A stretch of DNA of 64,000 nucleotides from NCBI GenBank assembly GCA_002269645.1, contig NIVC01003709.1, positions 17,399-81,398 on the forward strand. Reading direction: 5' to 3'. Below, piece after piece: positions 2,835-51,708 of the stretch (its first letter is position 1; each line of letters starts with the position of its first letter). The position numbers and the translations under genes are program-made. A model generated the notes under the pieces. The model saw only the letters and a program-made list of their open reading frames with translations. It ran no database searches and was not told where the DNA came from. The DNA is from Macrostomum lignano. Its lineage: Eukaryota.

Positions 2835-5615
2835 TGGCGACGAGGAAAAGTCACTGGATTCACTGAAGAAGCTGTGTACTGACTACCTTACGTTCGCAGG
2901 ACTGATAACTCAGCCGCTGGATTTTCGACTTGGAGAATTGCCTCTTTCTTATCATGAGATTGAGCAGTATTTCAAAAGACTGCAGTTTTACTTGGTGGCT
3001 TCAGGGAAGCAAGCTCACTCCAAAGCAGTACTTCTAGCGACATGCGGAGACGCAGCCTTCACGCTGATAGAAGAGCTTGCAAAGCCAAAAGACATCACGA
3101 AGGACGAAGTAACGTTCGATGATATCCAGAGTTCGCTAACCGCACATTTTAAGCCCAAAACATTGCTTCACTATGAGAGACACGTGCTTCACTCCATGGT
3201 GCAAAAAGAGGGTGAATCGATTGCTACCTACATCGAATGTCTAAAGCGCCAAGCCAACAAATGCAGATTCGGTGATCTCCGAGACGAACTAATTCTGTCG
3301 CAGTACATATTTGGCTTGCGGAATCAAGTGTTAAAGCAAAAGCTTCTTTCAAGAGAGGATGTCACTTTGGAAGGCGCGATACAAGAAGGTTTGCTGTCTG
3401 AGTCGATTAGGATGGCAACAAGCAAGCCGGATACAATCGCGGCGGTACAGAAGAAGAGTCATTCCGGATGGGTGAGACCAGAGAAGACGCCTGCCCACAA
3501 GCAGCAGCACAGTTTGGACAACCGCAAAGGACCGACAAAGCCTCGTGAAACTGGTCACTGCCACACATGCGGAAAAGCAGGACACGTCAGGTCAAAGTGC
3601 CGATTTCGGGATGCGCAGTGCCGAAAGTGTGGAAGGTTGGACACCTGGCAGCAGTTTGTCGCTCCAAGACCGTTAATGCTCTGCAGAACGTGTGCCGATC
3701 AGAGGATTCTAGCCATGGACATGTGGGAGCAATCTACGCGACAACTGACATCGGAGATCGTCATTCAACGGCTATATTTATTGGCTATACTGGGAATGGA
3801 TTTCCTATCGCGCCTGGACATACTACACATCGACGGAAGCATTTCAGAAGATCTTTGAAGATCTTTGATGCAAATTCGAGATTTCTCGCAAGTTTCCGCC
3901 TCCGCTCAGATGCTAGAACGGACGGCATGCGATATCCTGCCAGATCTCTGCCCTTTTCGATGAAGTCTATGGTTGAGACTGAGCTCAAGCGACTGCTAAA
4001 TGCAGGCATTATATATCCAGTGGAAGACCCAGACGTTTCTGCGCCAATTGTTCCAGTTTTAAAGCAGCAAGGCTCAACGAGACCAATACGTCTATGCGGC
4101 GACTACTCAGTCACGCTTAATCGCATAATCGATGCCGATCGCTACAAGCTTCCAAAGCTAGAAGAAATCCTTTCTAAAATTCCTAATGCCAAGTACTATT
4201 CAGTCTTGGATTTGGAAGACGCGTTTCTTTAAGTTGCGCTTTCGCCTGAGAGCCAGAAACTTACCTGCATCTCTACGCACCTGGGCCACTTCGCTTTCAA
4301 AAATCTTCAGTTCGGAATTTCCGCAGCACCATTAATATTCCAAGAAGTCATGGATGATGTGCTCAGAAACGTAGAATGCACTGCTTCGTATCAAGACGAC
4401 ATAATAATCGGAACTCCCGGAGACCGACAACAATACATGCTGGTGCTAAACAAGGTAAAGCAACGTTTGGCTGACAATGGGTTCAAAATTAACGCCCGCA
4501 AGTCACAGGAATGCTTAAAAAGCGTCAAGTTTCTCGGGTTCATTCTCCACAACGGCAAGCTCGAGCCTGATCCAGCGAGAATAGAGGCATGGGAAAATAT
4601 GCCAGATCCCGCGGATAAAGACCAATTAAAAAGCGCCTTGTGTACTCTTCGACACTACGGCCTGTTCTGCAAGAATTTTTCTATCATTGCTCGACCATTG
4701 TATTCATTATTGAAGAAAGGACAGCACTGGTTCTGGAACAAAGAACATTCACAGGCCTTCACGAGATTGAAGCAAAGTATTCGACAAGGAGCAATAACTG
4801 CTTACGACTCGTCCAAGCGTCTGTTTCTGACTTGTGATGCGTCAAAGGATGGATTGGGGTTCGTGCTCTCTCATGACAGAGAGCAGAGACAGATTGTTTG
4901 GCTCGGAAGCAGAGTGCTCACACCCGCAGAGGGCAATTATGCAAATATCGAACGAGAGGCGCTGGCTATCGTCGAAGGAGTTAAGTATTTCCACCAGTTT
5001 CTCGCCGGAAGAAGATTTACTATTCTATCAGACCACAGACCGCTTCAGTTCATTTTCGATCACAATAAATCGTCTGAGCGTGTTTCCGCCAGGCTTCAAC
5101 GCTGGTCGCTCATTCTACGAGCGTATGACTACAAGATCGAATATTCCAAAGACGATTCGATGTACGCCGCTGATACTCTGTCGCGACTTCCAAGTGGCAA
5201 TTGTATAACGAAGGAATCCGTCAACCTACTGTCAATAAATGCCCAGGACACCTTTGCGAATTCCGAAGATCTACTGCGTCGAATTGCTAAGACGAATGAC
5301 TGCCATCTGCAGACACTGAAGCATTACATTCAGGATGGATGGCCGGAGTACTTACCGAAAGTCATGCTGCCTTACTCAAAAGGAAAGCTTGAGTATACTA
5401 TACAGAATGGCATTGTGTTTAAAGGATTCAAGCGGATTGTACCACCCAGTGATTTAGGAACGGAAATTTTACACCTGCTGCATGAAAATCACCCCGGGAG
5501 TTGTGCGCATGATTCGCTTGGCACGACAGTATTTCTGGTGGCCAGGAATCGACACGCAGATAAACAGTTTCGTTCAAAGGTGTGCACAGTGTCAGCTTCA
5601 CGCAAGAAAGCGAAC
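2834..5615 (+). pseudogene. Disrupted gag-pol polyprotein
   Basis: Gag CHTCGKAGHVRSKC, with a second knuckle split by a frameshift at ~3633 (CRKCG/KVGHLAAVC). No recognisable protease D(T/S)G segment. TAA at 4230-4232 interrupts RT. A frameshift at ~5495 splits HENHPG from VVRMIRLARQYFWWPG...CAQC. Confidence 0.88.
2835..2846 (+). promoter_or_regulatory. Primer-binding site TGGCGACGAGGA
   Basis: Lies immediately after the LTR-terminal CA. It is complementary to a tRNA 3' end ...TCCTCGTCGCCA, as in metazoan tRNA-Ser(GCT). Confidence 0.8.
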
Positions 5616-5654
5616 TGCCAGTTACTAGCAATACGAGTAGCCAGTTACTAGCAA

Positions 5655-8087
5655 TCAGAGTAGAAAACCTTGCCGACGCAGCTCCTCAGTGACGCACAGC
5701 TGCGAGTTGCTATCCGCACCAGCCGGGACCAGCAGCTGCAGCACGGGTTCGCCAGTTCCCGGCTGGAACCGGATCAGCCTGGCCCTGATTGGTTCATAGG
5801 TGGCGCACTTTGTCAGCCGTTGAAATTCGGCGATGCACTCGTCGCTAGCACCGGCCGGTAGGACGAGCTCCGCGTCCAGGGTGCAGCGGATGGCCTGGCG
5901 GGGGTTTACGAGAGGCTTATAGAAACTAGTCTGTCTTAGTACTGGAAGCTGTGGGCATGTGGACTAGAAAAGGCCACCATGCACAGCTGAAGCAGCAGGA
6001 CGCTGCACTCGCGAATCGTGCAGACTGGCGAGATGGGAAGTTTTCAGTTCTTCAGCACTGAATCCCCAATTTCTCACCTGCTGGACTTCCGAATTGCAAA
6101 TGCAGCCAGCAGGTGTTTTGTCCGAGCTGCGCTTACAAGTTTATCAAGCTGCTTTTTTCATGAACTGCTGCCGGAGACCGGCAAGCAAGCAAAGTTGCGG
6201 CGAAATTGCAGTCGCTCCTGTCTCTGCAGTGTTTTGTCTGGACGGATTTGTCTATGGCCAAACCCCACTCAGCGCTGTGCAAAATGCAAATCTTTGACAA
6301 AAAACACCTGCTGGCTGCATTTGCAATTCGGAAGTCCAGCAGGTGAGACTTTCTTTCCAGAAAGCATGACCCCCCATCAACACGTACACTAAGAGGGACA
6401 GCTGACCCCCTGACCTCCCCCTGGATGGCTCTGCCATTTTAAGTGAAAAATCATCTTAAATTTCAGGGAGGGGGAAAAGCTGCCTTTTCTGTCCAGCTGA
6501 ATTGAACAGTTCTCTCTTATTGGTACAATGCCAAAGCGAAATCGGGATGCTAAATATATAAATCTGGCCAGTTTTTAAAAGTACACCCTTGGGGGCGGGA
6601 GTCCCCATTCATCCCTGATAACTTTCACTACCAACCTGGAAGGGCAGCTCGCAAAACTGAGGCTGCAGTCGGAACGCCCGGCCAACTGGCACCATCAGAG
6701 AGTCGCCATAGTCCAAACAGTCCACATCCAGCATAGCCTGCTGCTGCTGTGTAAGGTCAACACTGACAACTCTGGCCCGTTGCCAGGTTTGATCTGGCTC
6801 ATAATAAGCGGCCACCAATTCGCCTGGGCAAAGGTTGCAGCCTAGCGGATGGTCAGGCTTCAAACCATTATAGTACTCAACCATCGAGCAGACCAGATTG
6901 CTCAGACTTCTGCTCTGTTCGTTGTCGCACAGCAAGTAGAAAACTAAGGGATCGTCGCCTACAGCCGACACGCAGACGCTTATAGGTTCGTTGGTGGCTG
7001 GGAATGCAGCGAACCTAACAGGGTATGGAGGCTGGGGCGGCTGCTGAGCTGGCGGCTGAGGCTGCTGAGCTGGCGGCTGAGGCTGCTGAGCTGGCGGCTG
7101 AGGCTGCTGAGCTGGCGGCTGAGGCTGCTGAGCTGGCGGCTGGGGCTGCTGAGCTGGCGGCTGGGGCTGCTGAGCTGGCGGCTGAGGCTGCTGAGGCGAC
7201 GAAGAGGCAGAGTTAGCTCCGTTAGCAGAATTTGGAGCGCCATTTCTACTACGATTAGTTGAGCGCCTAGCGTCGCGCTGATCAATCTCGGCGCACAGCT
7301 GGTCGATTAAAGATTTAGCCAGGTCGATCTGGTCTTGGGTGCCGCACAGCGTCACCAGCCGGTTCTCCTCGTTGAGCCGGCCGCCGCCGCCGCCGCCGCG
7401 TTCGACGTCGATTTTGCACCGGGACTGAGTCATGAGATCGCGCACATTCTGGCCGCCCCTGCCAATCAGCGGGCCGATGTAGCGCGAAGCCAAACGAAAC
7501 TCGGCGGTCTCTTTGCGCGGCACCGCGGCTATGAGCCGACGCAGCTCCTCCTCGGCGGCGTGAACGCAGCGCGCCTCGCCGCGTATTCGGACAGGCTCCG
7601 TCGCTGAGGCCGACCTGCCGTCGGCTTGCGGGCCGTCACCGCCGTTAGCAGCCCGATTGACAAATGTAATTTTAGTCTTAGTAGTCTGCTGCAGTTGACG
7701 GATAGCGGCGCCGTCTTTGCCAATAATAGCGCCAATTGCTTCGCGCGGAATCGACATCAGCGCCACCTTGTAGGTGTCGGCCGTGGCCACTGTCTGATCG
7801 CCGGCCTCGGCTGGTCCGTCGGCATCGGCGGCGGCATCGGCGGCAGAGTCGCCAACTGCTCCAGCAGCGGAGTCTAGCACCTGACGGCGCTGCTTCTCAG
7901 CATAGCCAATGCCGACAGAGTGCAGCTGGACTGGGCGCTGGGTTCGATAGGTGAGGTACCAAAACACGGCACAGCCGGCCAGCACCAGGCAGTGGTAGGC
8001 CGGGCTGTCCATACCAGCAATAGTTACGAGGAGGAGTGAGGAGTGATCACGATCTGGAATAAGTTGGCGAGTTAGAGAAGCTTGCAT
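5655..8087 (-). CDS. TDRKH: Tudor and KH domain-containing protein (TDRKH/PAPI); exons 8087-6636 and 5894-5655, ~563 aa
   Basis: N-terminal hydrophobic helix, two KH domains (IIGKDG, LIGRGG) and an extended Tudor domain (WQRARV, DYGD, ELPFQ). Donor CAG|GTTGGT at 6636 and acceptor CGCCAG|GCC at 5894 join in phase 0 to AIRCTL...EFQRLTKCATYEPIRARL...EELRRQGFLL*, which is the expected Tudor C-terminal half and is not in the ORF track. Confidence 0.9.
5978..6348 (+). repeat. Fold-back dispersed repeat, copy 1 (TDRKH intron)
   Basis: ~6045-6297 matches the reverse complement of ~10838-11090; 6300-6348 is an inverted copy of 6073-6120. Confidence 0.85.
7038..7196 (-). repeat. Exonic 21-bp minisatellite encoding QQPQPPA x~8 in the TDRKH KH-Tudor linker
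   Basis: GGCTGCTGAGCTGGCGGCTGA repeats in frame within the TDRKH ORF. Confidence 0.9.
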
Positions 8088-11220: not shown

Positions 11221-14200
11221 TCAAAGCTCAGCCACCTCGACATCGTCATCTCCTGCATCAACTTCGTCGTCAGTGTCAGCGTCGGCCTCGGCCGCTCCGG
11301 TGCCAGCTGACGGCTGGCTGCCCTCGTCTATTGACTCCTCGCGGATGATGTCGCGCGGCGCCGGATGATGCTGATTGATGATGCCGCGCACTCTGGCCAG
11401 CTGCTCTTCGGTCAGCGAGTCTAGGGCTGCCTGCCATTCGGCCAGAGGCAGGTAAGCGTCGCACAGATCGGAGAAGTGCTTAGTATCTAAGGAATTTGAG
11501 CCGGAGTCCAGCGAGTTGTCCGCGCTGTCCGGACCGGAGGCGATGAGGAATGTGTGCTGCTGGGTGTCGCTGCCCTGCTGGCCGGGCAGCTGGCGGTAGT
11601 GAAAATCCCGGACTAAGAGAGTCATGTCATCGCGGATCACCTGGTTAAGTTGAGTAGGCCTAATTTATAGCTTGAGTAGGCCTAGTTGAGTAGGCCTAAC
11701 TGGCTGGGGTAGGGGTTGGCGGCATATCAAAGAACTGGCTGGGAGTGGGATTGGCGGCATATCAAAGAACTTGTTGGGGTAGGGGTTGGCGGCATATCAA
11801 AGAACTGGCTGGGGTAGGGGTTGGCGGCATATCAAAGAACTGGCTGGGAGTGGGATTGGCGGCATATCAAAGAACTTGTTGGGGTAGGGGTTGGCGGCAT
11901 ATCAAAGAACTGGCTGGGGTAGGGGTTGGCGGCATATCAAAGAACTGGCTGGGGTAGGGGTTGGCGGCATATCAAAGCACTGGCTGGGGTAGGGGTTGGC
12001 GGCATATCAAAGAACTGGCTGGGGTAGGGGTTTGCGGCATATCAAAGAACTTGTTGGGGTAGGGGTTGGCGGCACATTAAAGGACTGGCTGGGAGTGGGG
12101 TTGGCGGCATATCAAAGCACTGGCTGGGGTAGGGGTTGGCGGCATATCAAAGAACTGGCTGGGGTAGGGGTTGGCGGCATATCAAAGCACTGGCTGGGGT
12201 AGGGGTTGGCGGCATATCAAAGAACTGGCTGGGGTAGGGGTTTGCGGCATATCAAAGAACTGGCTGGGAGTGGGATTGGCGGCATTATATCAAAGAACTG
12301 GCTGGGGTAGGGGTTGGCGGCATATCAAAGAACTTGTTGGGGTAGGGGTTGGCGGCACATCAAAGGACTGGCTGGGAGTGGGGTTGGCGGCATATCAAAG
12401 CACTGGCTAAGAGTGAAGTGGGCGGCACATCAAAGGACTAGCTAAAGAAGAACCAGGCGATATCGCGAACTGACCTGCTGATCGCAGTCGCCAGCATAGA
12501 ACACGGCCTCCTTGTGCAGGCGGACTACATTGTCAACTACAGATTGGGATGCAGCCAGCAGGGAGTTGTCATTGTTGCGCAGTTCTTTAGCAACCAGGCT
12601 CACAATTTGGCCATTGTTGGTCCGATCGTCTTTGGCTGTGACCATCTCCAGCGTGTGAAATACGCCCCTGCGGATTGTTGAAATGCATTACTTATTGAGC
12701 GGGAAAATTGCGCGACACTTCGGGGACTGCAATATTGAGAATCGGAACTGCAATATTGAGAATCAGGACCGCCATATTGAGAATCGGGACCGCAATATTG
12801 AGAATCGGGACTGCAATATTGAGAATCGGGACCGCAATATTGAGAATCGGGACTGCAATATTGACAATCGGGACTGCAATATTGAGAATCGGGACTGCAA
12901 TATTGACAATCGGGACTGCAATATTGAGAATCGGGACCGCAATATTGAGAATCGGGACTGCAATATTGAGAATCGGGACTGCAATATTGACAATCGGGAC
13001 TGCAATATTGAGAATCGGGACCGCAATATTGAGAATCGGGACTGCAATATTGACAATCGGGACTGCAATATTGAGAATCGGGACTGCAATATTGACAATC
13101 GGGACTGCAATATTGAGAATCGGGACCGCAATATTGAGAATCGGGACTGCAATATTGAGGATCAGTGCTCCATCGGGGTCGAGAGTATTGCCAATGACTT
13201 GGCTCACTTAGTCATGAGCACCAGAAAGGCCCAGTCTTGCGGGCCCTCCACCGGGCCGGTGAGCGACACGAGCGGAGTGTCGGCGGGCTCCGGGGAGCCA
13301 AGCAAATAGTTGGCCGATGTCGGCGGCGCTGACGGCGTCAACAGTTGAAAACGGAGCGCCTGCCGACGCGGCTGCATCCGGCAGAGCAGCGCTCGACAAG
13401 AGCCGCCAACGCTGGCCACGTACAGCTTTTCAGAGTAGAGCAGCGCCATGGCTAGGGAGCACCGAGCGCCCAAGCCCTCTTTGAGGCTGTGCAGCTGGGC
13501 CAGGCTCTCCATCAGGTCGGCCTCGCTGCTAGATCGGGACTCTCGTAGCTGGCGAACCCGCTGCTGCGCGTCCTCGATGCGACGCTGGTTGTCAGTAACG
13601 ACATTTGTCCTGAGGAGGATTGAACGGTTTTGAACTAGCTAGTTAGTACAGGTTGTCATAGCAACGGGAATCGAACTCGGGACTGACTTAAAAAGAATCC
13701 CTTTATTTAACCATAAAGTAACTTCTCTGGAATATGGACAACTCTCATGAAAAACCAAGCGACTCCCGTGAACATCAAGCGACTCCCATGGAACCCAAGC
13801 GATCCCCATGGAACCCAAGCGGCTCCTATGAACCACAAGCGGCTCCCATGGAACCCAAGCGGCTCCCATGGAAACGAAGCGACTCCAATGGAACGAAAGC
13901 AAACTAAGATGGAACCTTCGTGAATCCTATGGAACCTAAACGACTCCCATGGAACCTAAACGACTCCCATGGAACCTAAACGACTCCCATGGAACCTAAA
14001 CGACTCCCATGGAACCTAAACGACTTCCATGGAACCTAAACGACTCCCATGGAACCCAAGCGACTCTCATGGAACCCAAGCGACTCTCATGGAACCCAAG
14101 TGACTTCCCATGGAACCCACGCAACTTCAACTACAAAGAAACTCCGGCCACCAACTTGAACATGTTGTCCACTCGTAGGATAGCATTTCGCATCACATCG

Positions 14201-14523
14201 GCCACAGTTTCGTCCGGCATTCCGGTAGACAATTCTAGCAGCACTTCGGCTGGCAGATGCTGACGAAAGAAACCGGCCAGAGCCTGGGATCCGTCGCCAG
14301 AGCCGTCAATCACAGCGTACAGATGGCAGGCCTGGTCTACTAGTTTATCAGAAGTGAAGGGGCCCAGCATGAAGTAGGCATTCTGGAAAGGGTGCACCTC
14401 GTGGGCCATCTCGCCGCCGGACTGCAGGGCTTGGTTGACTTGGGTGCCGGCGCCGCACTGGGTGCACTTGGACAGACTGTCCAATCCGCTGTGGGAGGCC
14501 GTCCTGCGGTGACCGTTGGGCAT
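11221..14523 (-). CDS. TAB1: TAB1-like PP2C-fold pseudophosphatase (TAK1-binding protein 1); exons 14523-14156, 13609-13208, 12667-12475, 11640-11221, ~460 aa
   Basis: Matches TAB1 motifs: LDSLSKC (WTDDLPLC), KLYVASVGGSCRALLC, FLVLMTKG, SVVDNVVRLHKE, DDMTLLVRDF, and C-terminal DAYLPLAEW (TAK1-binding-like). All three GT-AG junctions are phase-consistent. The start codon is uncertain. Confidence 0.82.
11700..12440. repeat. 35-bp minisatellite, 21 units, TAB1 intron 3
   Basis: Unit GGGGTAGGGGTTGGCGGCATATCAAAGAACTGGCT. Confidence 0.97.
12721..13160. repeat. 21-bp minisatellite, ~21 units, TAB1 intron 2
   Basis: Unit CGGGACTGCAATATTGAGAAT, with C/T and G/C variants. Confidence 0.97.
13755..14125. 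repeat. Degenerate 20-bp minisatellite, TAB1 intron 1
   Basis: Unit ATGGAACCTAAACGACTCCC / ATGGAACCCAAGCGGCTCCC. Confidence 0.92.
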
Positions 14524-14639: not shown

Positions 14640-15748
14640 TGTGAAACAGATGAGTGAGGAGGAGTGACATAGATGAGTGAATGTGTGAGGGGAGTAGGAC
14701 ACAGATGAGTGAATGTGTGAGGGGAGCAGGACATAGATGAGTGAATGTGTGATGGGAGTAGGACACAGATGAGTGAATGTGTGAGGGGAGTAGGATATAG
14801 ATGAGTGAATGTGTGAGGGGAGTAGGACACAGATGAGTGAATGTGTGAGGGGAGCAGGACATAGATGAGTGAATGTGTGAGGGGAGTAGGACATAGATGA
14901 GTGAATGTGTGAGGGGAGCAGGACATAGATGAGTGAATGTGTGAGGGGAGCAGGACATAGATGAGTGAATGTGTGAGGGGAGCAGGACATAGATGAGTGA
15001 ATGTGTGAGGGGAGCAGGACATAGATGAGTGAATGTGTGAGGGGAGCAGGACATAGATGAGTGAATGTGTGAGGGGAGCAGGACATAGATGAGTGAATGT
15101 GTGAGGGGAGCAGGACATAGATGAGTGAATGTGTGAGGGGAGCAGGACATAGATGAGTGAATGTGTGAGGGGAGCAGGACATAGATGAGTGAATGTGTGA
15201 GGGGAGCAGGACATAGATGAGTGAATGTGTGAGGGGAGCAGGACATAGATGAGTGAATGTGTGAGGGGAGCAGGACATAGATGAGTGAATGTGTGAGGGG
15301 AGCAGGACATAGATGAGTGAATGTGTGAGGGGAGCAGGACATAGATGAGTGAATGTGTGAGGGGAGCAGGACATAGATGAGTGAATGTGTGAGGGGAGCA
15401 GGACATAGATGAGTGAATGTGTGAGGGGAGCAGGACACAGATGAGTGAATGTGTGAGGGAGCAGGACATAGATGAGTGAATGTGTGAGGGGAGCAGGACA
15501 TAGATGAGTGAATGTGTGAGGGGAGCAGGACACAGATGAGTGAATGTGTGAGGGGAGCAGGACATAGATGAGTGAATGTGTGAGGGGAGCAGAGTGAATG
15601 TGTGAGGGGAGCAGGACATAGATGAGTGAATGTGTGAGGGAGCAGGACATAGATGAGTGAATGTGTGAGGGGAGCAGGACATAGATGAGTGAATGTGTGA
15701 GGGGAGCAGGACATAGATGAGTGAATGTGTGAGGGGAGCAGGACACAG
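14640..15748. repeat. 32-bp minisatellite, ~34 units, upstream of TAB1
   Basis: Unit GAGGGGAGCAGGACATAGATGAGTGAATGTGT. Confidence 0.97.
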
Positions 15749-16518: not shown

Positions 16519-18332
16519 TTAAACAGGCGGAGGGCCGAATAGCGAGTCGTAGGAAGGCGGCATCTGGGGCAGCTGGGCGCTGCCGTCTGGCTCCGAAAAA
16601 CTCGCCAACTCAGCAGTAGTAAACGCCGTTGCCGAAACCGCCGCTTCCAGCTCTTTGCGCTCGGCGGATCCCGGCCAAGCGAACCACCAACTGTGCACCT
16701 CCAGCGAATACGAGGTGCTGTCGTCCGAGTAGAACCGACCGGACACGTTGCCGGTGCAGGCGAGGCGCCAGCCATTGGTTGTAAACTCGCCCAACAGGTT
16801 TGTTAGCAGGATGCGCCAGTCCAGCTTGTTGCAGGCCTGACCGCGGAATTTCAACTCGTACGCGTGCTCTCTGGGATTGACGGGGTGGGGTGCAAGCCAG
16901 CGATTCAATACAAGGCCTCCGCTATCTGCGGCTCTTCACCCTCCACTGCCCCTATCTGCGGCTCTTCACCCTCCACTGCCCCTATCTGCGGCTCTTCACC
17001 CTCCACTGCCCCTATCTGCGGCTCTTTACCCTCCACTGCCGCTATCTGCGGCTCTTTACCCTCCACTGCCGCTATCTGCGGCTCTTTACCCTCCACTGCC
17101 CCTATCTGCGGTTCTTTACCCTCCACTGCCGCTACTGTGGCTCTTTACCCTCCACTGCCGCTATCTGCGGCTCTTAACCCTCCACTGCCGCTATCTGTGG
17201 CTCTTAACCCTCCACTGCCCCTATCTGCGGTTCTTTACCCTCCACTGCCGCTACTGTGGCTCTTTACCCTCCACTGCCGCTATCTGCGGCTCTTAACCTC
17301 CACTGCCGCTATCTGTGGCTCTTTACCCTCCACTGCCGCTATCTGCGGCTCTTCACCCTCCACTGCCGCTATCTGCGGCTCTTAACCCTCCACTGCCGCT
17401 ATCTGCGGCTCTTCACCCTCCACTGCCCCTATCTACGGCTCTTTACCCTCCACTGCCCCTATCTGCGGCTCTTAACCCTCCACTGCCGCTATCTGCGGCT
17501 CTTTACCCTCCACTGCCGCTATCTGCGGCTCTTAACCCTCCACTGCCGCTATCTGCGGCTCTTAACCCTCCACTGCCCCTATCTGCGGCTCTTCACCCTC
17601 CACTGCCCCTATCTACGGCTCTTTACCCTCCACTGCCCCTATCTGCGGCTCTTAACCCTCCACTGCCGCTATCTGCGGCTCTTTACCCTCCACTGCCGCT
17701 ATCTGCGGCTCTTCACCCTCCACTGCCGCTCTCTCCCGCTCTACTTAGTTTTCTAGAAAGTCAATTACATGCACTCTGGATTGATTGTTTACTCACCTAG
17801 CCTTCTGCGAAGCCACATTGCCGCAAGCGTTGGCCACAGCAATAGACGATTCTAGCAGGCCCTCTGGCACGTCGATGAAGCTCAGCCGATTGGACACACC
17901 GGTCCAGAAGCAGCAGTGCCGCACTGGCTCTGGCTCCGGCGCCGTCCTAGCAAACAGGAATGCACTTTTAATCACCGGATAGCGCCTATAAATGTCCAAC
18001 GAATGCAGCACCCGCCAGCCGCGAGTTCTCAATTCGCCTAGTAGGCGGCAAATCAATTGGCGGCAAAGATTCTTCGAGTTCTTATCGGTTGGTAGCCAGG
18101 GCGAGCCACCAAGCCGGATGTCCACCGCGCCATAGTAGTTGCCGTGGGACTGGACCCCGCGATGCCACAGGCGATTCAGGGCGTTGGCAAGCCAGGTAGA
18201 GTCCGAGTCGGGATCGCCACCCTCCATGCGTACGCTCTGCTTGTCGTGCAGAGAGATTAGCATCAGTTGCGCCTGCTGCAGGCTCAGTGCGCTCGGGTGA
18301 TCAGCTGGGAAGGGTAGGGGTGACTTAGTGTC

Positions 18333-18389
<57 letters not shown>

Positions 18390-21300
18390 GTCAGTCAGTC
18401 AGTCAGTCAGTCAGTCAGTCAGTCAGTCAGTCAGTCAGTCAGTCCCATCTGCCATCCCTCACAGAAAATATCATCGCAGCCGCCGTCTCTGTGGCAGAAG
18501 TACAGCGAGTCGCTGCTGTCTTTGATTCGCGCGCTGGTCAACAGCTGCCAGCCATTTCGCTGCATCAATTCCACCAGACGCAGCAGCAGTCGTCTAGCCG
18601 ACGCCCCATCGGCCTTCTGAGCGGTCCACGGGCAGCCGGACAGGCGCAGCTCGGAGCCGGCGCACTGGACGCCGGCCGGCCACATGCTGGCGACCAGCTC
18701 GGCCACCCGCTCGGTCAGACCAGGCGGGAAGCGCACGAAGCGGAGGCCGTTGCTCTGCGTCAGCATCAGACAGCAGCAATAGAAGTTTTGAGCGTCGGTG
18801 TCGGCGCCGACTAGGGGATCGGCGTCGGGCCGGCGCTGAAAAAACCAAGTAGCCACGTCGCGGACGTTAGTGACTATGGGTGCCGCGACCAGGGCCCAGC
18901 CAGCGCGCCAGGAGGCCAGCAGCAGGTCGCAGGCCAGCTCTCGTGCGGCGATGGCGTCGTTGCTAGGCGAGCCGCGGGCGAAGGGACTGTGCGACAGCTT
19001 TAGCGTCCAGGCCTGCATAGTGCATACGTAGTGAAGCTGCTGTTCATGTACTTTAGTGTCTAATTTGATCATCTGGGACTGTAACACCTATGCCTGAGGA
19101 TCTGGGACTGTAGCACCCATGCCTGAGGATCTGGGACTGTAGCACCCATGCCTGAGGATCTGGGACTGTAGCACCCATGCCTGAGGATCTGGGAGCACCC
19201 ATACCTGAGGATCTGGGACTGTAGCACCCATGCCTGAGGATCTGGGACTGTAGCACCTATGCCTGAGGATCTGGGACTGTAGCACCCATGCCTGAGGATC
19301 TGGGACTGTAGCACCCATGCCTGAGGATCTGGGACTGTAGCACCCATGCCTGAGGATCTGGGAGCACCCATACCTGAGGATCTGGGACTGTAGCACCCAT
19401 GCCTGAGGATCTGGGACTGTAGCACCCATGCCTGAGGATCTGGGAGCACCCATACCTGAGGATCTGGGACTGTAGCACCCATGCCTGAGGATCTGGGACT
19501 GTAGCACCCATGCCTAAGGATCTGGGACTGTAGCACCCATGCCTGAGGATCTGGGAGCACCCATACCTGAGGATCTGGGACTGTAGCACCCATGCCTGAG
19601 GATCTGGGAGCACCCATACCTGAGGATCTGGGACTGTAGCACTCATTCCTGAGGATCTGGGACTGTAGCACCCATGCCTGAGGATCTGGGACTGTAGCAC
19701 CCATGCCTGAGGATCTGGGACTGTAGCATTCATGCCTGAGGATCTGGGACTGTAGCACCCATGCCTGAGGATCTGGGACTGTAGCACCCATGCCTGAGGA
19801 TCTGGGAGCACCCATACCTGAGGATCTGGGACTGTAGCACCCATGCCTGAGGATCTGGGACTGTAACATCGTAGCACCTATGCCTGAGGATCTGGGACTG
19901 TAACATCGTAGCACCTACGAGGGGCATACTGAAAGTTTTGAGATACACCGAAACCAAAAATGTCTGAAGCAAAATTTTTGTCACAACTTTCAAAGTAGTT
20001 GCCACCCGCTTGTACGCATTTCCTCATCCGGTGAAACCACTGTGTCCAGGCTCCAGCCCACTGTTCTTCTGGCACTGCTGACACTACCCGCTCGAACTCG
20101 AATCTTGCTGCTTCAGGGCTCTCAAACCGAGTCCCACGCAGTTGGTTCTTCACCAAAGGGAAGAGAAAGAAGTCGCAGGGTGCCAGGTCAGGGGAATATG
20201 CGGGATGCGTCACCAACTGGACTCCATTTTCAGCCAGAAATGCCAATGTTGCAGCAGCTGTGTGCGCACTGGCATTGTCGTGGTGCAGCAGCAGACCACG
20301 AAGTCCGGTGCGCGGCCGGCGTCTGCGCCACGCATCGAGCACGAGTGGCAGGCACTGGTTGATATACCAGTCGGCATTGACTGTCCGCCTGTCTTGGAGC
20401 GCTACAGTCGCCAGGTGGCCAGCCTGGCTGAAGAAAGTCGCCACCATCTGCTTCCCGACGCTGCGGGCCCGCTTGACCTTCGTTGGGGTGGCATCGTCCG
20501 GAAGGAGCCAAACTGCCGACTGCTGCTTGGTTTCCGGGTCGTACTGGTAGACCCAGGTCTCATCGCCTGTGATGATCTCCCAGCATCGCTTCGAGGCCCC
20601 AGAATCGAATCTTTCGAGCATAAACTCGCACCAACGCACCCTCTCCGCTTTCTGGTCCTCCGTCAGGTTGTGGGGCACCCATCGGGCACACCGCTTGGAG
20701 GCTCCCAGCTTGTCGTGCAGGATGGTCGTAACCGCTGCCGATCCAATGCCGAGGGCGTCTCTGATCTCGGCACAGGTCACTCGCCGGTCCTCGTCAATCA
20801 TTCTCCGAAACGCAGCGATGTTTTCATCCGTGACTGCAGAAGCTGGACGTCCCGTCCGAGGCTCGTCATCAAGGCTGCTTCGGCCCCACTTACACTCGCT
20901 GTACCAACGAAAAACTGTGGCACGTGAAGGGGCTTGGTCTCCAAAGGCAGCACGTAAACTTTCAACGCACTGCTCCTGCGTGAGACCTTTTCGCTGGTCG
21001 TAAACTATCATGGCACGAAAGTCGCGGTTTGTCAACTCCATTGGAGCAAGTACAGTTTGGTAGGGGGTATTGATTTTGAAGAGTGATTGTGAAAAATTGA
21101 CAAAAGCGCGAAGGCTGAAAATTTATACCCAATCATCTTAAGGGTGGTAGAGTATGTACATAAAAATTTGTGCAGTTGTGACTTATGAGTCAACCATATC
21201 TCAAAACTTTCAGTACGCCCCTCGTATGCCTGAGGATCTGGGACTGTAGCAGCCACCTATAATAGGCGGATATTGGTAATCAACCTGATCTGGCTGCTGC

Positions 21301-25580: not shown

Positions 25581-26700
25581 CCACAGATACAAGAATAACT
25601 GTCACTTGCTCTCATCTACTCTATTGTCAGTAGCAAAACTGGGGTTTTTGTCTTAAGTTAATGAATTTAAAAATAGTTTTTAAAGAGCAACAATCGTCAC
25701 TGGCTGTCTACAAGAAGACCCATCAAAAGCATCTTCATCCTGCTTGAAGCTGCACCCATCCAGTGCGTGTGCATAGAGAGCTATATTGGGCCTACCCCCT
25801 AGACTGAGTTTCGTCCGTCTGACTTTGACCTCTCTCCTTGCTGCTCTCTCATTGGCTGAGCTAGATTGGGCCTGCCCCCTAGATTGAGGTTTGTCTGTCT
25901 GATTTTGACCTCTCCCCTTGCTGCTCTGTCATTGGCTGAGCTAGATTGGGCCTGCCCCCTAGATTGAGGTTTGTCTGTCTGATTTTGACCTCTCCCCTTG
26001 CTGCTCTCTCATTGGCTGAGCTAGATTGGGCCTGCCCCCTAGATTGAGGTTTGTCTGTCTGATTTTGACCTCTCCCCTTGCTGCTCTCTCATTGGCTGAG
26101 CTAGATTGGGCCTGCCCCCTAGATTGAGGTTTGTCTGTCTGATTTTGACCTCTCCCCTTGCTGCTCTCTCATTGACTGAGCTAGAAGGAATGCTTTCACA
26201 AGGTCGAAAATTTAATATAACAAGAACCATACAGTAGTTTCCTACGTTGTGAAATTTCGACCTTGTGAAATTTCGACCATATGAAGTCTCTTGCTAAAGT
26301 TTTCAATGTTGTGAAATTTCGATCTTGTGAAGTTTTGACCTTGTGAAAGTGGCTGCAGCTGTTTAAGTTTTCTACGTTGTGAAATTTTGACCTTATGAAG
26401 TCCTTTGCTAAAGTTTTCGATGTTTTGAAAATTCGACCTTGTGAAAGTGGCTGCTATTTGAGTTTTCGACGTTGTGAAATTTCGAGTTTGTGAACCCCCC
26501 CCCAGCTAGATTGGGCCTGCCCCCTAGGTTGAGGTTTGTCTGTTTGACTTTGACCTCTCTCCTTGCTGCTCTCTCATTGGCTGAGCTAGATTTGGCCTGC
26601 CCACACAACACTGTGCATACAAACTACTGAAAACAGAGTAGATGCTGTACTTTTACACAACTTTTTTGCGAGTGATATCTGGTTATTCTAGTATGTGTCT
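25581..26700. mobile_element. Non-autonomous TIR element carrying an 80-bp satellite, copy A
   Basis: Left end CCACAGATACAAGAATAACT-GTCACTTGC; right end GCGAGTGATATCTGGTTATTCTAGTATGTG (inverse). About 6 internal 80-bp units (25778-26184, 26504-26600). Arms are homologous to 30830-31890 in the opposite orientation. Confidence 0.72.
26185..26503. mobile_element. Nested 319-bp insertion made of ~17-bp GTTGTGAAATTTCGACC-like repeats
   Basis: Interrupts an 80-bp unit, with AGCTAG duplicated at 26179-26184 and 26504-26509. Confidence 0.7.
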
Positions 26701-27515: not shown

Positions 27516-29057
<1,542 letters not shown>

Positions 29058-30829: not shown

Positions 30830-31890
30830 TCACAGATACTAGACTAACTAGACATGTCACTCGTAATGTAAGAAAGTTTGTCAACAAGTTCAGCATCTAC
30901 ACTTTTTCAATAGTTTATCCGTGCAGTGTCACTTAAACTTAATGTGGCAACTAAAATTTCCTTTTTGCGGGCTAAGGAATTTAACTCGATGTACGCAAGT
31001 AAACTCAGCTAGGGGGCAGGCCCAATCTAGCTCAGCCAATGAGAGAGCAGCAAGAGAGAGGTCAAAGTCAGACGGACGAAACTCAGCCTAGGGGGCAGGC
31101 CCAATCTAGCTCAGCCAATGAGAGAGCAGCAAGGAGAGAGGTCAAAGTCAGACGGACGAAACTCAGCCTAGGGGGCAGGCCCAATCTAGCTCAGCCAATG
31201 AGAGAGCAGCAAGGAGAGAGGTCAAAGTCAGACGGACGAAACTCAGCCTAGGGGCAGGCCCAATCTAGCTCAGCCAATGAGAGAGCAGCAAGGAGAGAGG
31301 TCAAAGTCAGACGGACGAAACTCAGCCTCAGCCAATCTAGAGCCAATGAGAGAGCAGCAAGGAGAGAGGTCAAAGTCAGACGGACGAAACTCAGCCTAGG
31401 GGCAGGCCCAATCTAGCTCAGCCAATGAGAGAGCAGCAAAGAGAGGTCAAAGTCAGACGGACGAAACTCAGCCTAGGGGCAGGCCTAGGCCTATACATAA
31501 GCAGTTGTTATATATCATCCTTGGACAGGACTAATCTAGCTCAGCCAATGAGAGAGCAGTAAGGGAGAGATCAAAGTCAGACACAAAGGGTAAGAGAAAA
31601 GCCTAACTGTTTATTGGCCTGGATGGCGCCACCTTTTTTTCTCTCTTGCTTGCTATGCACCCGCACTGGATTTGGGTGCAGCTTCCAACAGGATGAAGAT
31701 CCTAATTTAATTGGGTCTGCTTGTAGACAGCCAGAGATGCGATTGTTGCAGCTATTAAATATTAAAAATATCTGCAAAATTTAATAAATTTTAATCCTAA
31801 TAATATAAAGGCAGAAACGCTACTTTTGCTACTGAAAGATTGATGAGCGAGCGCATTTCTTGCGAGTGACATCCAGTTGTTCTAGTATCT
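30830..31890. mobile_element. Non-autonomous TIR element carrying an 80-bp satellite, copy B (inverted relative to copy A)
   Basis: Left end CACAGATACTAGACTAACTAGACATGTCACTCG; right end GCGAGTGACATCCAGTTGTTCTAGTATCT. About 7 units of GGGGCAGGCCCAATCTAGCTCAGCCAATGAGAGAGCAGCAAGGAGAGAGGTCAAAGTCAGACGGACGAAACTCAGCCTAG at ~31005-31580. 31650-31750 is the inverse of 25688-25778. Confidence 0.75.

Positions 31891-39595: not shown

Positions 39596-51708
<12,113 letters not shown>

What the first reader, a model, noticed from the sequence alone, without database searches (positions are those of the whole stretch)
11700..12440. TAB1 intronic minisatellite is a tandem array of bipartite TCF/LEF sites (HMG site + Helper site)
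Seen: on the minus strand each 35-bp unit reads (T/G)CTTTGAT-AT-GCCGCCA; 20 of 21 units keep CTTTGAT and about 18 keep GCCGCCA. Established: CTTTGAT is the core TCF/LEF HMG-box site, GCCGCCR is the Helper site bound by the C-clamp of invertebrate TCF/Pangolin/POP-1, and the TAB1-TAK1-NLK pathway (TAP-1/MOM-4/LIT-1) antagonises TCF. Inference: a minisatellite may have produced a natural TOPflash-like Wnt-responsive enhancer inside a Wnt-antagonist gene, giving a copy-number-tunable feedback loop, or it may act as a TCF sink. A chance match in a single founder unit, then amplified, remains possible.
Basis: partly seen in the sequence, partly recalled or inferred. Interest (0 to 1): 0.78.

Follow-up and report, generated by a model that had tools for sequence, protein, structure and literature searches.

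The report
Flatworm intron minisatellite with TCF-like motifs
A 21-copy, 35-base repeat in the last intron of a TAB1-like gene of the flatworm Macrostomum lignano really does carry a textbook two-part TCF (Wnt-pathway) binding motif in nearly every copy, but it sits in a genome where almost every intron holds its own unrelated repeat, so it is most likely an ordinary repeat that copied a chance motif.

Summary
On the minus strand, 11698-12435 holds 21 head-to-tail units of 35 bp. Twenty keep CTTTGAT, 18 keep GCCGCCA, and 15 read exactly CTTTGATATGCCGCCA.

The window is Macrostomum lignano (contig NIVC01003709.1). The array fills 92% of the last intron of a four-exon gene whose best structural relatives are TAB1.

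The Helper lies 3' of the HMG core on the same strand, one base closer than the "FF0" layout that Drosophila TCF binds best. That is a real and fairly rare coincidence: about 2.5e-5 per random unit in any orientation, and about 1e-6 for this layout.

Nothing here shows function:
- The window holds 20 unrelated minisatellites (18.8% of its bases), one in every intron examined.
- Tandem and simple repeats make up 15% of this genome, so a few such arrays are expected by chance.
- Most units miss both flanking S positions of the 11-bp TCF consensus.
- The array grew by block duplication, which copied a Helper-broken unit.
- The only other copy I could fetch is a 99.1% identical duplicate with the same 21 units, so it tests neither conservation nor copy-number change.

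I could not establish whether M. lignano TCF has a C-clamp.

Verdict: an ordinary minisatellite with a chance founder motif. It may bind TCF incidentally, and this is cheap to test.

The parts
11698..12435 (-). 35-bp minisatellite of 21 units. Consensus on the minus strand: TCTTTGATATGCCGCCAACCCCTACCCCAGCCAGT. Unit 1 (12435-12401) is the most diverged edge unit; unit 5 carries a 3-bp insertion.
   Evidence: TRF; unit-by-unit listing; unit string abcdefdgdbhfdgdijdijd shows block duplications.
11641..12474 (-). Last intron (intron 3) of the TAB1-like gene: 834 nt, GTCAGT...CCAG, phase 0, 92% tandem repeat.
   Evidence: The spliced model translates without stops and is 100% identical to NCBI protein PAA50138.1. 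All three sense frames of the intron are closed, with 9-11 stops each. Occupancy.
11672..11698 (-). Short 14-bp repeat (TAGGCCTACTCAAC-like, about 2 to 3 copies) between the array and the 3' splice site.
   Evidence: TRF; sequence.
11221..11640 (-). Exon 4 (last coding exon) of the TAB1-like gene. It begins VIRDDMTLLVRDFHY and has an acidic C-terminal tail.
   Evidence: ORF list; gene model; alignment to TAB1 structure 2irm.
12475..12667 (-). Exon 3 of the TAB1-like gene.
13208..13609 (-). Exon 2 of the TAB1-like gene.
14156..14523 (-). Exon 1 (first coding exon in my model) of the TAB1-like gene.
12723..13163 (.). Unrelated 21-bp minisatellite (21 copies) filling 82% of intron 2. Included as context showing that array-filled introns are the rule here.
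13755..14119 (.). Unrelated 20-bp minisatellite (18 copies) filling 67% of intron 1.

Best explanation
This is an ordinary, selectively neutral intronic minisatellite of Macrostomum lignano. A single stretch of about 35 bp in the last intron of a TAB1-like gene happened to contain CTTTGAT, then two bases, then GCCGCC. That stretch was amplified by replication slippage and unequal exchange, first unit by unit and later in blocks of three to eight units, until it made up nearly the whole intron. The 20 TCF-like sites are therefore copies of one chance event, not 20 independent events and not the product of selection. If the chromatin is open and this worm's TCF has the usual specificity, the array may bind TCF incidentally, but no regulatory role is implied. 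Shown: the array, its position, its motif content, its block structure, and the abundance of unrelated arrays around it. Inferred: neutrality, and the slippage and unequal-exchange origin.
For: 1. The window holds 20 arrays with period of at least 10 and at least 4 copies. Together they cover 12,024 bp, or 18.8% of the window. Their units are unrelated, and all three introns of this gene are 67%, 82% and 92% array. Introns of the neighbouring MCM gene and of the upstream gene also carry arrays.
2. The genome paper reports that simple and tandem repeats make up 15% of the 764-Mb assembly (PMC5730564). That is on the order of 1e5 arrays. At 2.5e-5 to 3.5e-4 per unit, roughly 2 to 35 HMG+Helper arrays are expected by chance genome-wide.
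3. The unit string abcdefdgdbhfdgdijdijd shows growth by block duplication. The Helper-broken unit f (GCCGCAA) was copied with its block, and a unit with a broken core (CTTTAAT) persists.
4. Thirteen of 21 units score only 8/11 against SCTTTGWWSWW. The best-fitting variant, CCTTTGATGTG (10/11), is confined to units 1 and 3.
5. Motif columns are variable in 3 of 14 cases against 12 of 21 for the rest of the unit. Fisher p = 0.046, falling to 0.25 once the degenerate edge unit is dropped, and the variants are not independent events.
6. A 40-motif panel of familiar TF cores hits 7 of 19 array units, and about 3.3 of 19 random non-array segments of the same lengths. TF-like words in short units are therefore commonplace.
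7. The unit occurs nowhere else in the window or in L003, so it is not a dispersed regulatory module.
8. No Rfam family matches the window.
Against: The coincidence is not trivial under the narrow hypothesis. Fourteen specified bases sit in the same-strand, Helper-downstream layout, one base tighter than the FF0 reporter CCTTTGATCTTGCCGCCA. For that layout the chance is about 1e-6 to 3e-5 per random unit, which gives only about 0.1 to 3 such arrays expected in the whole genome. The host gene belongs to the TAK1-NLK branch that regulates TCF in other animals. The motif half of the unit is nominally less variable than the other half. No other HMG+Helper pair exists in the other 63 kb of the window. 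Neutrality is inferred, not shown. No binding, accessibility, expression or cross-species data were available.
Confidence: 0.72

Rival explanations
1. The array is a working Wnt-responsive enhancer. TCF binds each unit through its HMG domain (CTTTGAT) and its C-clamp (GCCGCCA). Beta-catenin then activates the TAB1-like gene, whose product feeds the TAK1-NLK branch that restrains TCF. This would be a negative feedback loop whose gain depends on copy number.
For: Eighteen of 21 units carry both half-sites in the FF orientation with a 2-nt spacer. FF0 to FF2 pairs are among the best bound and most enriched configurations for Drosophila TCF/Pan (PMC4154663). C-clamps are reported in nearly all invertebrate TCFs (PMC3896468). 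Motif columns are nominally less variable than the rest of the unit (p = 0.046). Multimerised HMG-Helper pairs drive Wnt reporters in flies (PMC4154663).
Against: No binding or expression data exist. The majority units miss both S positions of the 11-bp HMG consensus. The Helper overlaps the last position of that 11-mer, a spacing (FF-1) that was not among those tested. Damaged units were propagated. Two assembled copies have identical copy number. Whether M. lignano TCF has a C-clamp is unknown, and flatworm TCFs are duplicated and divergent (PMC5643146, PMC8651982). The TAK1-binding tail of TAB1 was not detectable in this protein, so even the pathway assignment rests on the PP2C-like domain alone. 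The link to the gene's function is post hoc.
Confidence: 0.1
2. Incidental binding platform or sink. TCF, or another HMG-box protein, occupies the array simply because 20 good cores are clustered there, but occupancy has no effect, or only a titrating effect, on transcription.
For: Twenty exact CTTTGAT cores lie within 740 bp. [quoted passage not shown] Hoverter et al. suggest that Helper sites can act as a sink bringing TCF close to WREs (PMC4267635).
Against: Twenty sites are few against the genome-wide supply. The window alone has 36 further CTTTGAT cores outside this array. Chromatin state is unknown. A second array with about 21 CTTTGAT cores but no Helper sits in an MCM intron, which suggests such clusters arise without purpose.
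Confidence: 0.12
3. The repeat acts through something other than TCF. One option is the C-rich half of the unit (AACCCCTACCCCAGCC) as an RNA element in the pre-mRNA that binds poly(C)-binding proteins. Another is the G-rich template strand forming G-quadruplexes. A third is the GC-rich heptamer serving another zinc-finger factor.
For: The sense-strand RNA carries two CCCC runs per unit. The opposite strand has 7 GGGG-N2-GGGG...GGGG-N2-GGGG stretches that could fold with one long loop. GCCGCCA is also one base away from Kozak-like and YY1-like words (my own knowledge, a lead only).
Against: There is no canonical G4 with loops of 7 or fewer and no Rfam match. Neighbouring introns are filled by arrays of quite different composition, so no common sequence requirement is evident.
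Confidence: 0.04

Closest known systems
Intragenic minisatellites of repeat-rich invertebrate genomes; here, the tandem-repeat fraction of Macrostomum lignano (15% of the assembly; Wudarski et al. 2017, PMC5730564)
   Same: Head-to-tail units of 20-80 bp, tens of copies, non-coding, degenerate edge unit, higher-order block duplications, G/C strand asymmetry, and many unrelated arrays side by side in introns.
   Different: Nothing structural. The only special feature is that the founder unit contains a recognisable bipartite transcription-factor motif.
Bipartite HMG-Helper TCF sites of Wnt-dependent cis-regulatory modules (Chang et al. 2008; Archbold et al. 2014, PMC4154663), and synthetic multimer reporters such as FF0 constructs and TOPflash
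   Same: CTTTGAT core plus GCCGCCR on the same strand, Helper downstream and almost adjacent. Many copies in tandem, as in synthetic reporters.
   Different: Natural W-CRMs hold 2-4 pairs of varied layout within unique sequence, whereas this is 21 identical-by-descent copies. The spacer is 2 nt where FF0 has 3 (CCTTTGATCTT|GCCGCCA). Most units lack the flanking S positions of the HMG consensus. No evidence of TCF binding or Wnt response, and the species' TCF is uncharacterised.
Repeat-derived transcription-factor binding arrays, for example GGAA microsatellites used as EWS-FLI1 response elements, and transposon-borne TF sites (my own knowledge)
   Same: A repeat expansion that multiplies a TF-site-like word could create a binding platform whose strength scales with copy number.
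   Different: Those cases rest on binding and expression data. Here the parallel is only by sequence.

Membership tests
Minisatellite (tandem repeat, unit 10-100 bp) | Head-to-tail copies of a 10-100 bp unit | tested here: met
   Period 35, 20.2 copies, 90% matches; 21 units listed.
Minisatellite (tandem repeat, unit 10-100 bp) | Non-coding; not an exon-encoded peptide repeat | tested here: met
   35 is not a multiple of 3. There are 9-11 stops in each sense frame of the intron. The region is spliced out of the model that matches PAA50138.1 at 100%.
Minisatellite (tandem repeat, unit 10-100 bp) | Variant units arranged in blocks, with degenerate units at the edge (growth by slippage or unequal exchange) | tested here: met
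   Unit string abcdefdgdbhfdgdijdijd; edge unit a is the most diverged.
Minisatellite (tandem repeat, unit 10-100 bp) | Copy-number polymorphism between alleles or individuals | tested here: inconclusive
   The only second copy available (L002, 99.1% identical over 15 kb) has the same 21 units in the same order. No population data.
Bipartite TCF site (HMG site + Helper site) / Wnt-dependent cis-regulatory module | HMG core CTTTGWW | tested here: met
   20 of 21 units have CTTTGAT.
Bipartite TCF site (HMG site + Helper site) / Wnt-dependent cis-regulatory module | Full 11-bp HMG consensus SCTTTGWWSWW (the text of PMC4154663 prints 10 letters for an 11-bp site, and CCTTTGATCTT fits only with WW in the middle) | tested here: not met
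   13 units score 8/11, six score 9/11 and two score 10/11. No unit reaches 11/11, because the Helper's first G occupies position 11.
Bipartite TCF site (HMG site + Helper site) / Wnt-dependent cis-regulatory module | Helper site GCCGCCR | tested here: met
   18 of 21 units have GCCGCCA; one has GCCGCCC and two have GCCGCAA.
Bipartite TCF site (HMG site + Helper site) / Wnt-dependent cis-regulatory module | Helper close to the HMG site in a productive layout (AK0-6 or FF0-2 preferred) | tested here: inconclusive
   Orientation is FF. The spacer between CTTTGAT and GCCGCCA is 2 nt in 20 units and 5 nt in one. FF0 in the published oligos has 3 nt (CCTTTGATCTTGCCGCCA), so this is FF-1, a spacing that was not tested.
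Bipartite TCF site (HMG site + Helper site) / Wnt-dependent cis-regulatory module | The species has a TCF with a C-clamp | not testable with these tools
   A C-clamp profile search returned only three exon fragments from other animals. A full-length Pangolin query returned 5,245 hits, of which only the best 120, all insects, are listed. No paper on M. lignano TCF was found. The literature says nearly all invertebrate TCFs have a C-clamp (PMC3896468).
Bipartite TCF site (HMG site + Helper site) / Wnt-dependent cis-regulatory module | TCF occupancy and Wnt/beta-catenin-dependent activity lost on mutating the sites | not testable with these tools
   Needs experiments.
Bipartite TCF site (HMG site + Helper site) / Wnt-dependent cis-regulatory module | Conservation of the motif pair in orthologous sequence | not testable with these tools
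   Only near-identical duplicates from the same assembly could be fetched. No orthologue from another Macrostomum species appeared in the protein search.
TAB1 (TAK1-binding protein 1) for the host gene | PP2C-like domain whose closest relatives are TAB1 | tested here: met
   The six PDB sequences matched are all TAB1 (for example 2irm, 2j4o, 8xi8, 2pom, 5nzz; E from 1e-17 to 2e-14), covering both ends of the domain, including ...DDMTLLVRDF. Rat TAB1 and a Trichoplax protein are among the few distant hits. Pfam PP2C is just above cut-off: 22 bits against 20.3.
TAB1 (TAK1-binding protein 1) for the host gene | C-terminal TAK1-binding motif | tested here: inconclusive
   The C-terminal 124 residues have no significant match to any PDB chain, TAK1-TAB1 fusion chains included. 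A short motif could escape this search.

The most novel reading that the evidence does not exclude
A minisatellite expansion has turned one chance HMG+Helper pair into a natural TOPflash-like multimer that recruits TCF/beta-catenin inside a TAB1-like gene of a regenerating flatworm. This would give a Wnt feedback element whose strength scales with repeat number, and would be an example of regulatory DNA born directly from tandem-repeat growth.
Probability: 0.1. Interest if true: 0.7.

Novelty: new member of a known kind. Interest (0 to 1): 0.3.

Why it matters
If the array were a working TCF enhancer, it would be a clean natural case of a repeat expansion creating a signalling-responsive element. 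It would lie in an animal where transgenic reporters and RNAi are routine, and in a gene of a pathway that restrains TCF. As the evidence stands, the lesson is mainly a caution. In a genome where about a fifth of local sequence is minisatellite, a motif multiplied 20-fold is one event and not 20. A striking transcription-factor word in a repeat unit is expected a few times per genome. The wider pattern seen here, a different minisatellite filling nearly every intron, may be the more interesting biology.

Tried and rejected
1. Finding the M. lignano TCF to look for a C-clamp. A 47-residue C-clamp profile found only three exon-sized fragments from a fly-like source and from trout. A full-length Pangolin query, written from memory and 97% identical to the D. 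sechellia protein, gave 5,245 hits, but only the top 120, all insects, are listed. Literature searches found nothing on M. lignano TCF or on flatworm C-clamps. The question stays open.
2. Cross-copy conservation. P0002 and P0003 are alternative gene models of the same locus. P0003, the only one of the two looked up, has no contig on record. L002 and L003 are about 99% identical duplicates of the locus, so they say nothing about selection.
3. Sampling more of the genome through a multi-copy protein. The mariner-like transposase ORF is not on record as a called gene, so the genome-wide test of minisatellite units against shuffles could not be run.
4. A dispersed repeat family or transposon origin. 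The unit occurs only in this array within the window and is absent from L003. Rejected as far as the data reach.
5. Coding repeat. Rejected: stops in all frames, and the unit length is not a multiple of 3.
6. Structured RNA. No Rfam match at gathering thresholds anywhere in the window.
7. Enrichment of the TCF core among arrays. A second array also carries CTTTGAT, but given that the first was selected for it, one more among 19 arrays has a probability of about 0.09 (my estimate from base composition; arrays). Not significant.
8. TAK1-binding tail of TAB1. Not detected by sequence.
Full report
WHAT IS THERE

Tandem Repeats Finder reports one array at 11698-12408 with period 35, 20.2 copies and 90% matches. 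On the minus strand the sequence splits into 21 units running from 12435 down to about 11698.
- Twenty units contain CTTTGAT; unit 11 has CTTTAAT.
- Eighteen contain GCCGCCA. Unit 1 has GCCGCCC, and units 6 and 12 have GCCGCAA.
- Fifteen read exactly CTTTGATATGCCGCCA.
- The consensus unit is TCTTTGATATGCCGCCAACCCCTACCCCAGCCAGT.

WHERE IT IS

The flanks are coding exons on the minus strand. A four-exon model (14523-14156, 13609-13208, 12667-12475, 11640-11221) translates to 460 residues without stops. It is 100% identical to NCBI protein PAA50138.1, "hypothetical protein BOX15_Mlig005590g2" of Macrostomum lignano.

The locus is on contig NIVC01003709.1 of assembly GCA_002269645.1.

All six solved structures matched are TAB1, with E from 1e-17 to 2e-14. 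The alignments cover both ends of the PP2C-like domain, including the ...DDMTLLVRDF end. Pfam PP2C is just above threshold. I could not detect the C-terminal TAK1-binding motif by sequence. "TAB1-like" is therefore sound for the domain but not proven for the pathway role.

The array lies in the last intron (11641-12474, GT...AG, phase 0) and, with a short 14-bp repeat next to it, makes up 92% of that intron. All sense frames are closed.

THE MOTIF PAIR COMPARED WITH WHAT IS KNOWN

Archbold et al. 2014 (PMC4154663) define the fly HMG site as an 11-bp consensus, exemplified by CCTTTGATCTT, and the Helper as GCCGCCR. They found two best layouts: AK6, and FF0 with the Helper immediately downstream on the same strand. 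A Helper in any orientation raised affinity.

Their FF0 oligo reads CCTTTGATCTTGCCGCCA. The array reads TCTTTGATAT-GCCGCCA. It has the same orientation with the Helper one base closer ("FF-1"), a spacing they did not test. Unit 5, with its 3-bp insertion, is FF2.

Against SCTTTGWWSWW, 13 units score 8/11, six score 9/11 and two score 10/11 (units 1 and 3, CCTTTGATGTG). The core and the Helper are therefore textbook and the layout is close to optimal. The majority unit is sub-optimal at both flanking S positions, and the best-fitting variant is the rarest.

HOW UNLIKELY IS IT

Repetition multiplies one event, so the question concerns one founder unit. Random 35-mers with the window's composition, treated as tandem units, carry the pair at these rates:

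| Motif definition | Any orientation, gap up to 12 | Observed FF layout, gap up to 3 |
|---|---|---|
| CTTTGAT + GCCGCCR | 2.5e-5 | 1e-6 |
| CTTTGWW + GCCGCCR | 7.8e-5 | 5e-6 |
| CTTTGWW + RCCGCC | 3.5e-4 | 3e-5 |

With 20 arrays in the window, this TCF-specific hypothesis has a per-window chance of about 5e-4 to 7e-3.

Genome-wide the picture changes. Simple and tandem repeats are 15% of the 764-Mb assembly (PMC5730564). At roughly 600 bp per array, as in this window, that is on the order of 1e5 arrays. About 2 to 35 arrays with an HMG+Helper pair are then expected by chance, and about 0.1 to 3 in the FF layout.

The motif and the link to the gene's pathway were both recognised after the fact. 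A small panel of 40 familiar transcription-factor cores already hits 7 of 19 array units here. It hits about 3.3 of 19 random non-array segments of the same lengths. My reading is that the coincidence is real and moderately rare, but is of the size a genome scan should be expected to turn up.

THE SURROUNDINGS

The window holds 20 minisatellites with period of at least 10 and at least 4 copies. They cover 12,024 bp, or 18.8% of the window, and all have unrelated units.
- The three introns of this gene are 67%, 82% and 92% array.
- The MCM gene at about 42.5-47.4 kb has arrays at 43294-43541, 44117-45116 and 46154-46900 between its exon-sized coding ORFs.
- The gene upstream of the TAB1-like gene shows the same pattern.

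The existence of an array in this intron therefore needs no special explanation. Only the content of its founder unit is notable.

One other array (46154-46900, 28-bp unit) also carries CTTTGAT in about 21 units, without a Helper. Given that the first array was selected for the motif, one more among 19 has a probability of about 0.09. No other HMG+Helper pair exists in the remaining 63 kb. The 35-bp unit occurs nowhere else in the sequence I hold.

SIGNS OF SELECTION, OR THEIR ABSENCE

The unit types read abcdefdgdbhfdgdijdijd. The block b-c-..-f-d-g-d recurs as b-h-f-d-g-d, and i-j-d occurs twice. The array therefore grew by multi-unit duplication, as minisatellites do. The Helper-broken unit f was copied along with its block, and the core-broken unit h persists.

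Motif columns vary in 3 of 14 cases against 12 of 21 for the rest of the unit (Fisher p = 0.046). The value falls to 0.25 without the degenerate edge unit. The non-motif variants are a few multi-column events copied many times. I do not regard this as evidence of constraint.

A second contig (L002, the end of NIVC01001965.1) is 99.1% identical over 15 kb, with 31 substitutions and many single-base gaps. It carries the same 21 units in the same order. It confirms that the array is real. It is too recent a duplicate to test conservation, and it shows no copy-number difference.

THE C-CLAMP QUESTION

- A C-clamp profile search returned three exon fragments from other animals.
- A full-length Pangolin query returned 5,245 hits, of which only the best 120, all insects, are listed.
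- The literature states that nearly all invertebrate TCFs have a C-clamp (PMC3896468).
- Planarians have three to five divergent TCFs, only some with a beta-catenin-binding domain (PMC5643146, PMC8651982).
- I found nothing on M. lignano TCF.

VERDICT

The most likely account (about 0.72) is a neutral intronic minisatellite that amplified a chance HMG+Helper pair.

Incidental TCF binding without consequence (about 0.12) and a true Wnt-responsive enhancer or feedback element (about 0.10) remain open. Some other sequence-dependent role is unlikely (about 0.04).

The enhancer idea is cheap to test in this transgenic-competent worm, which is the main reason the finding keeps some interest.

Noticed in passing
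window 1-64000 (arrays listed), e.g. 12723-13163, 13755-14119, 14658-15745, 16919-17742, 19071-19865, 43294-43541, 44117-45116, 46154-46900: Almost every intron examined carries its own unrelated minisatellite (units of 20-45 bp, 10-38 copies), often making up 67-92% of the intron. Arrays total 18.8% of the window. I found no paper describing this intron-filling pattern in M. lignano beyond the 15% genome-wide tandem-repeat figure.
   Followed up: partly
window 46154-46900: A 28-bp minisatellite (25 copies) in an intron of an MCM gene also carries the TCF core (ATCAAAG on the plus strand) in about 21 units, but has no Helper site.
   Followed up: partly
window 25778-26185 and 31001-31485, flanking 27516-29021: Two 79/80-bp tandem arrays are reverse complements of each other. 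They bracket about 4.8 kb containing an intronless katanin-p60-like AAA ATPase gene (MIT + AAA + Vps4_C domains). The unit contains a CCAAT-box-like AGCCAATGAG. This may be a foldback-type mobile element or a captured gene.
   Followed up: no
window 19878-21041 (-): Uninterrupted 387-aa Mos1/mariner-like transposase ORF (HTH_48, Transposase_1, DDE_3). Its 3' end runs into the 29-bp minisatellite at 19071-19865. It is not on record as a called gene.
   Followed up: partly
window 2938-5651 (+): LTR-retrotransposon remains: a gag ORF and an RT/RNase H ORF in separate frames. The same stretch aligns in the duplicate contigs L002 and L003, so the insertion predates the duplication.
   Followed up: partly
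window 7039-7195 (-), within ORF 6609-8087: A 21-bp repeat of 7.5 copies lies in frame inside the Tudor-KH (TDRKH-like) gene next door and encodes QQPQPPA repeats. It is a coding minisatellite, unlike the intronic ones.
   Followed up: no
L002 1-15103 and L003 1-8767 against window 15142-1: Two other contigs of the same assembly (NIVC01001965.1, NIVC01002748.1) duplicate this locus at 97.6-99.1% identity, and both stop at a contig end inside or near a minisatellite. This is consistent with the known redundancy of the DV1 assembly, and with arrays breaking the assembly.
   Followed up: yes
window 11641-11700 (-): Three copies of TAGGCCTACTCAA(C) lie directly upstream of the 3' splice site of the array-bearing intron, where a branch point and polypyrimidine tract would be expected.
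   Followed up: no
protein cluster of P0001: The 90%-identity cluster that holds the TAB1-like protein also holds Tudor-KH proteins, because a 1,555-aa UniRef model (A0A1I8JHN3) fuses the neighbouring genes. Older gene models of this locus (P0002, P0003) are mis-spliced around the arrays.
   Followed up: partly
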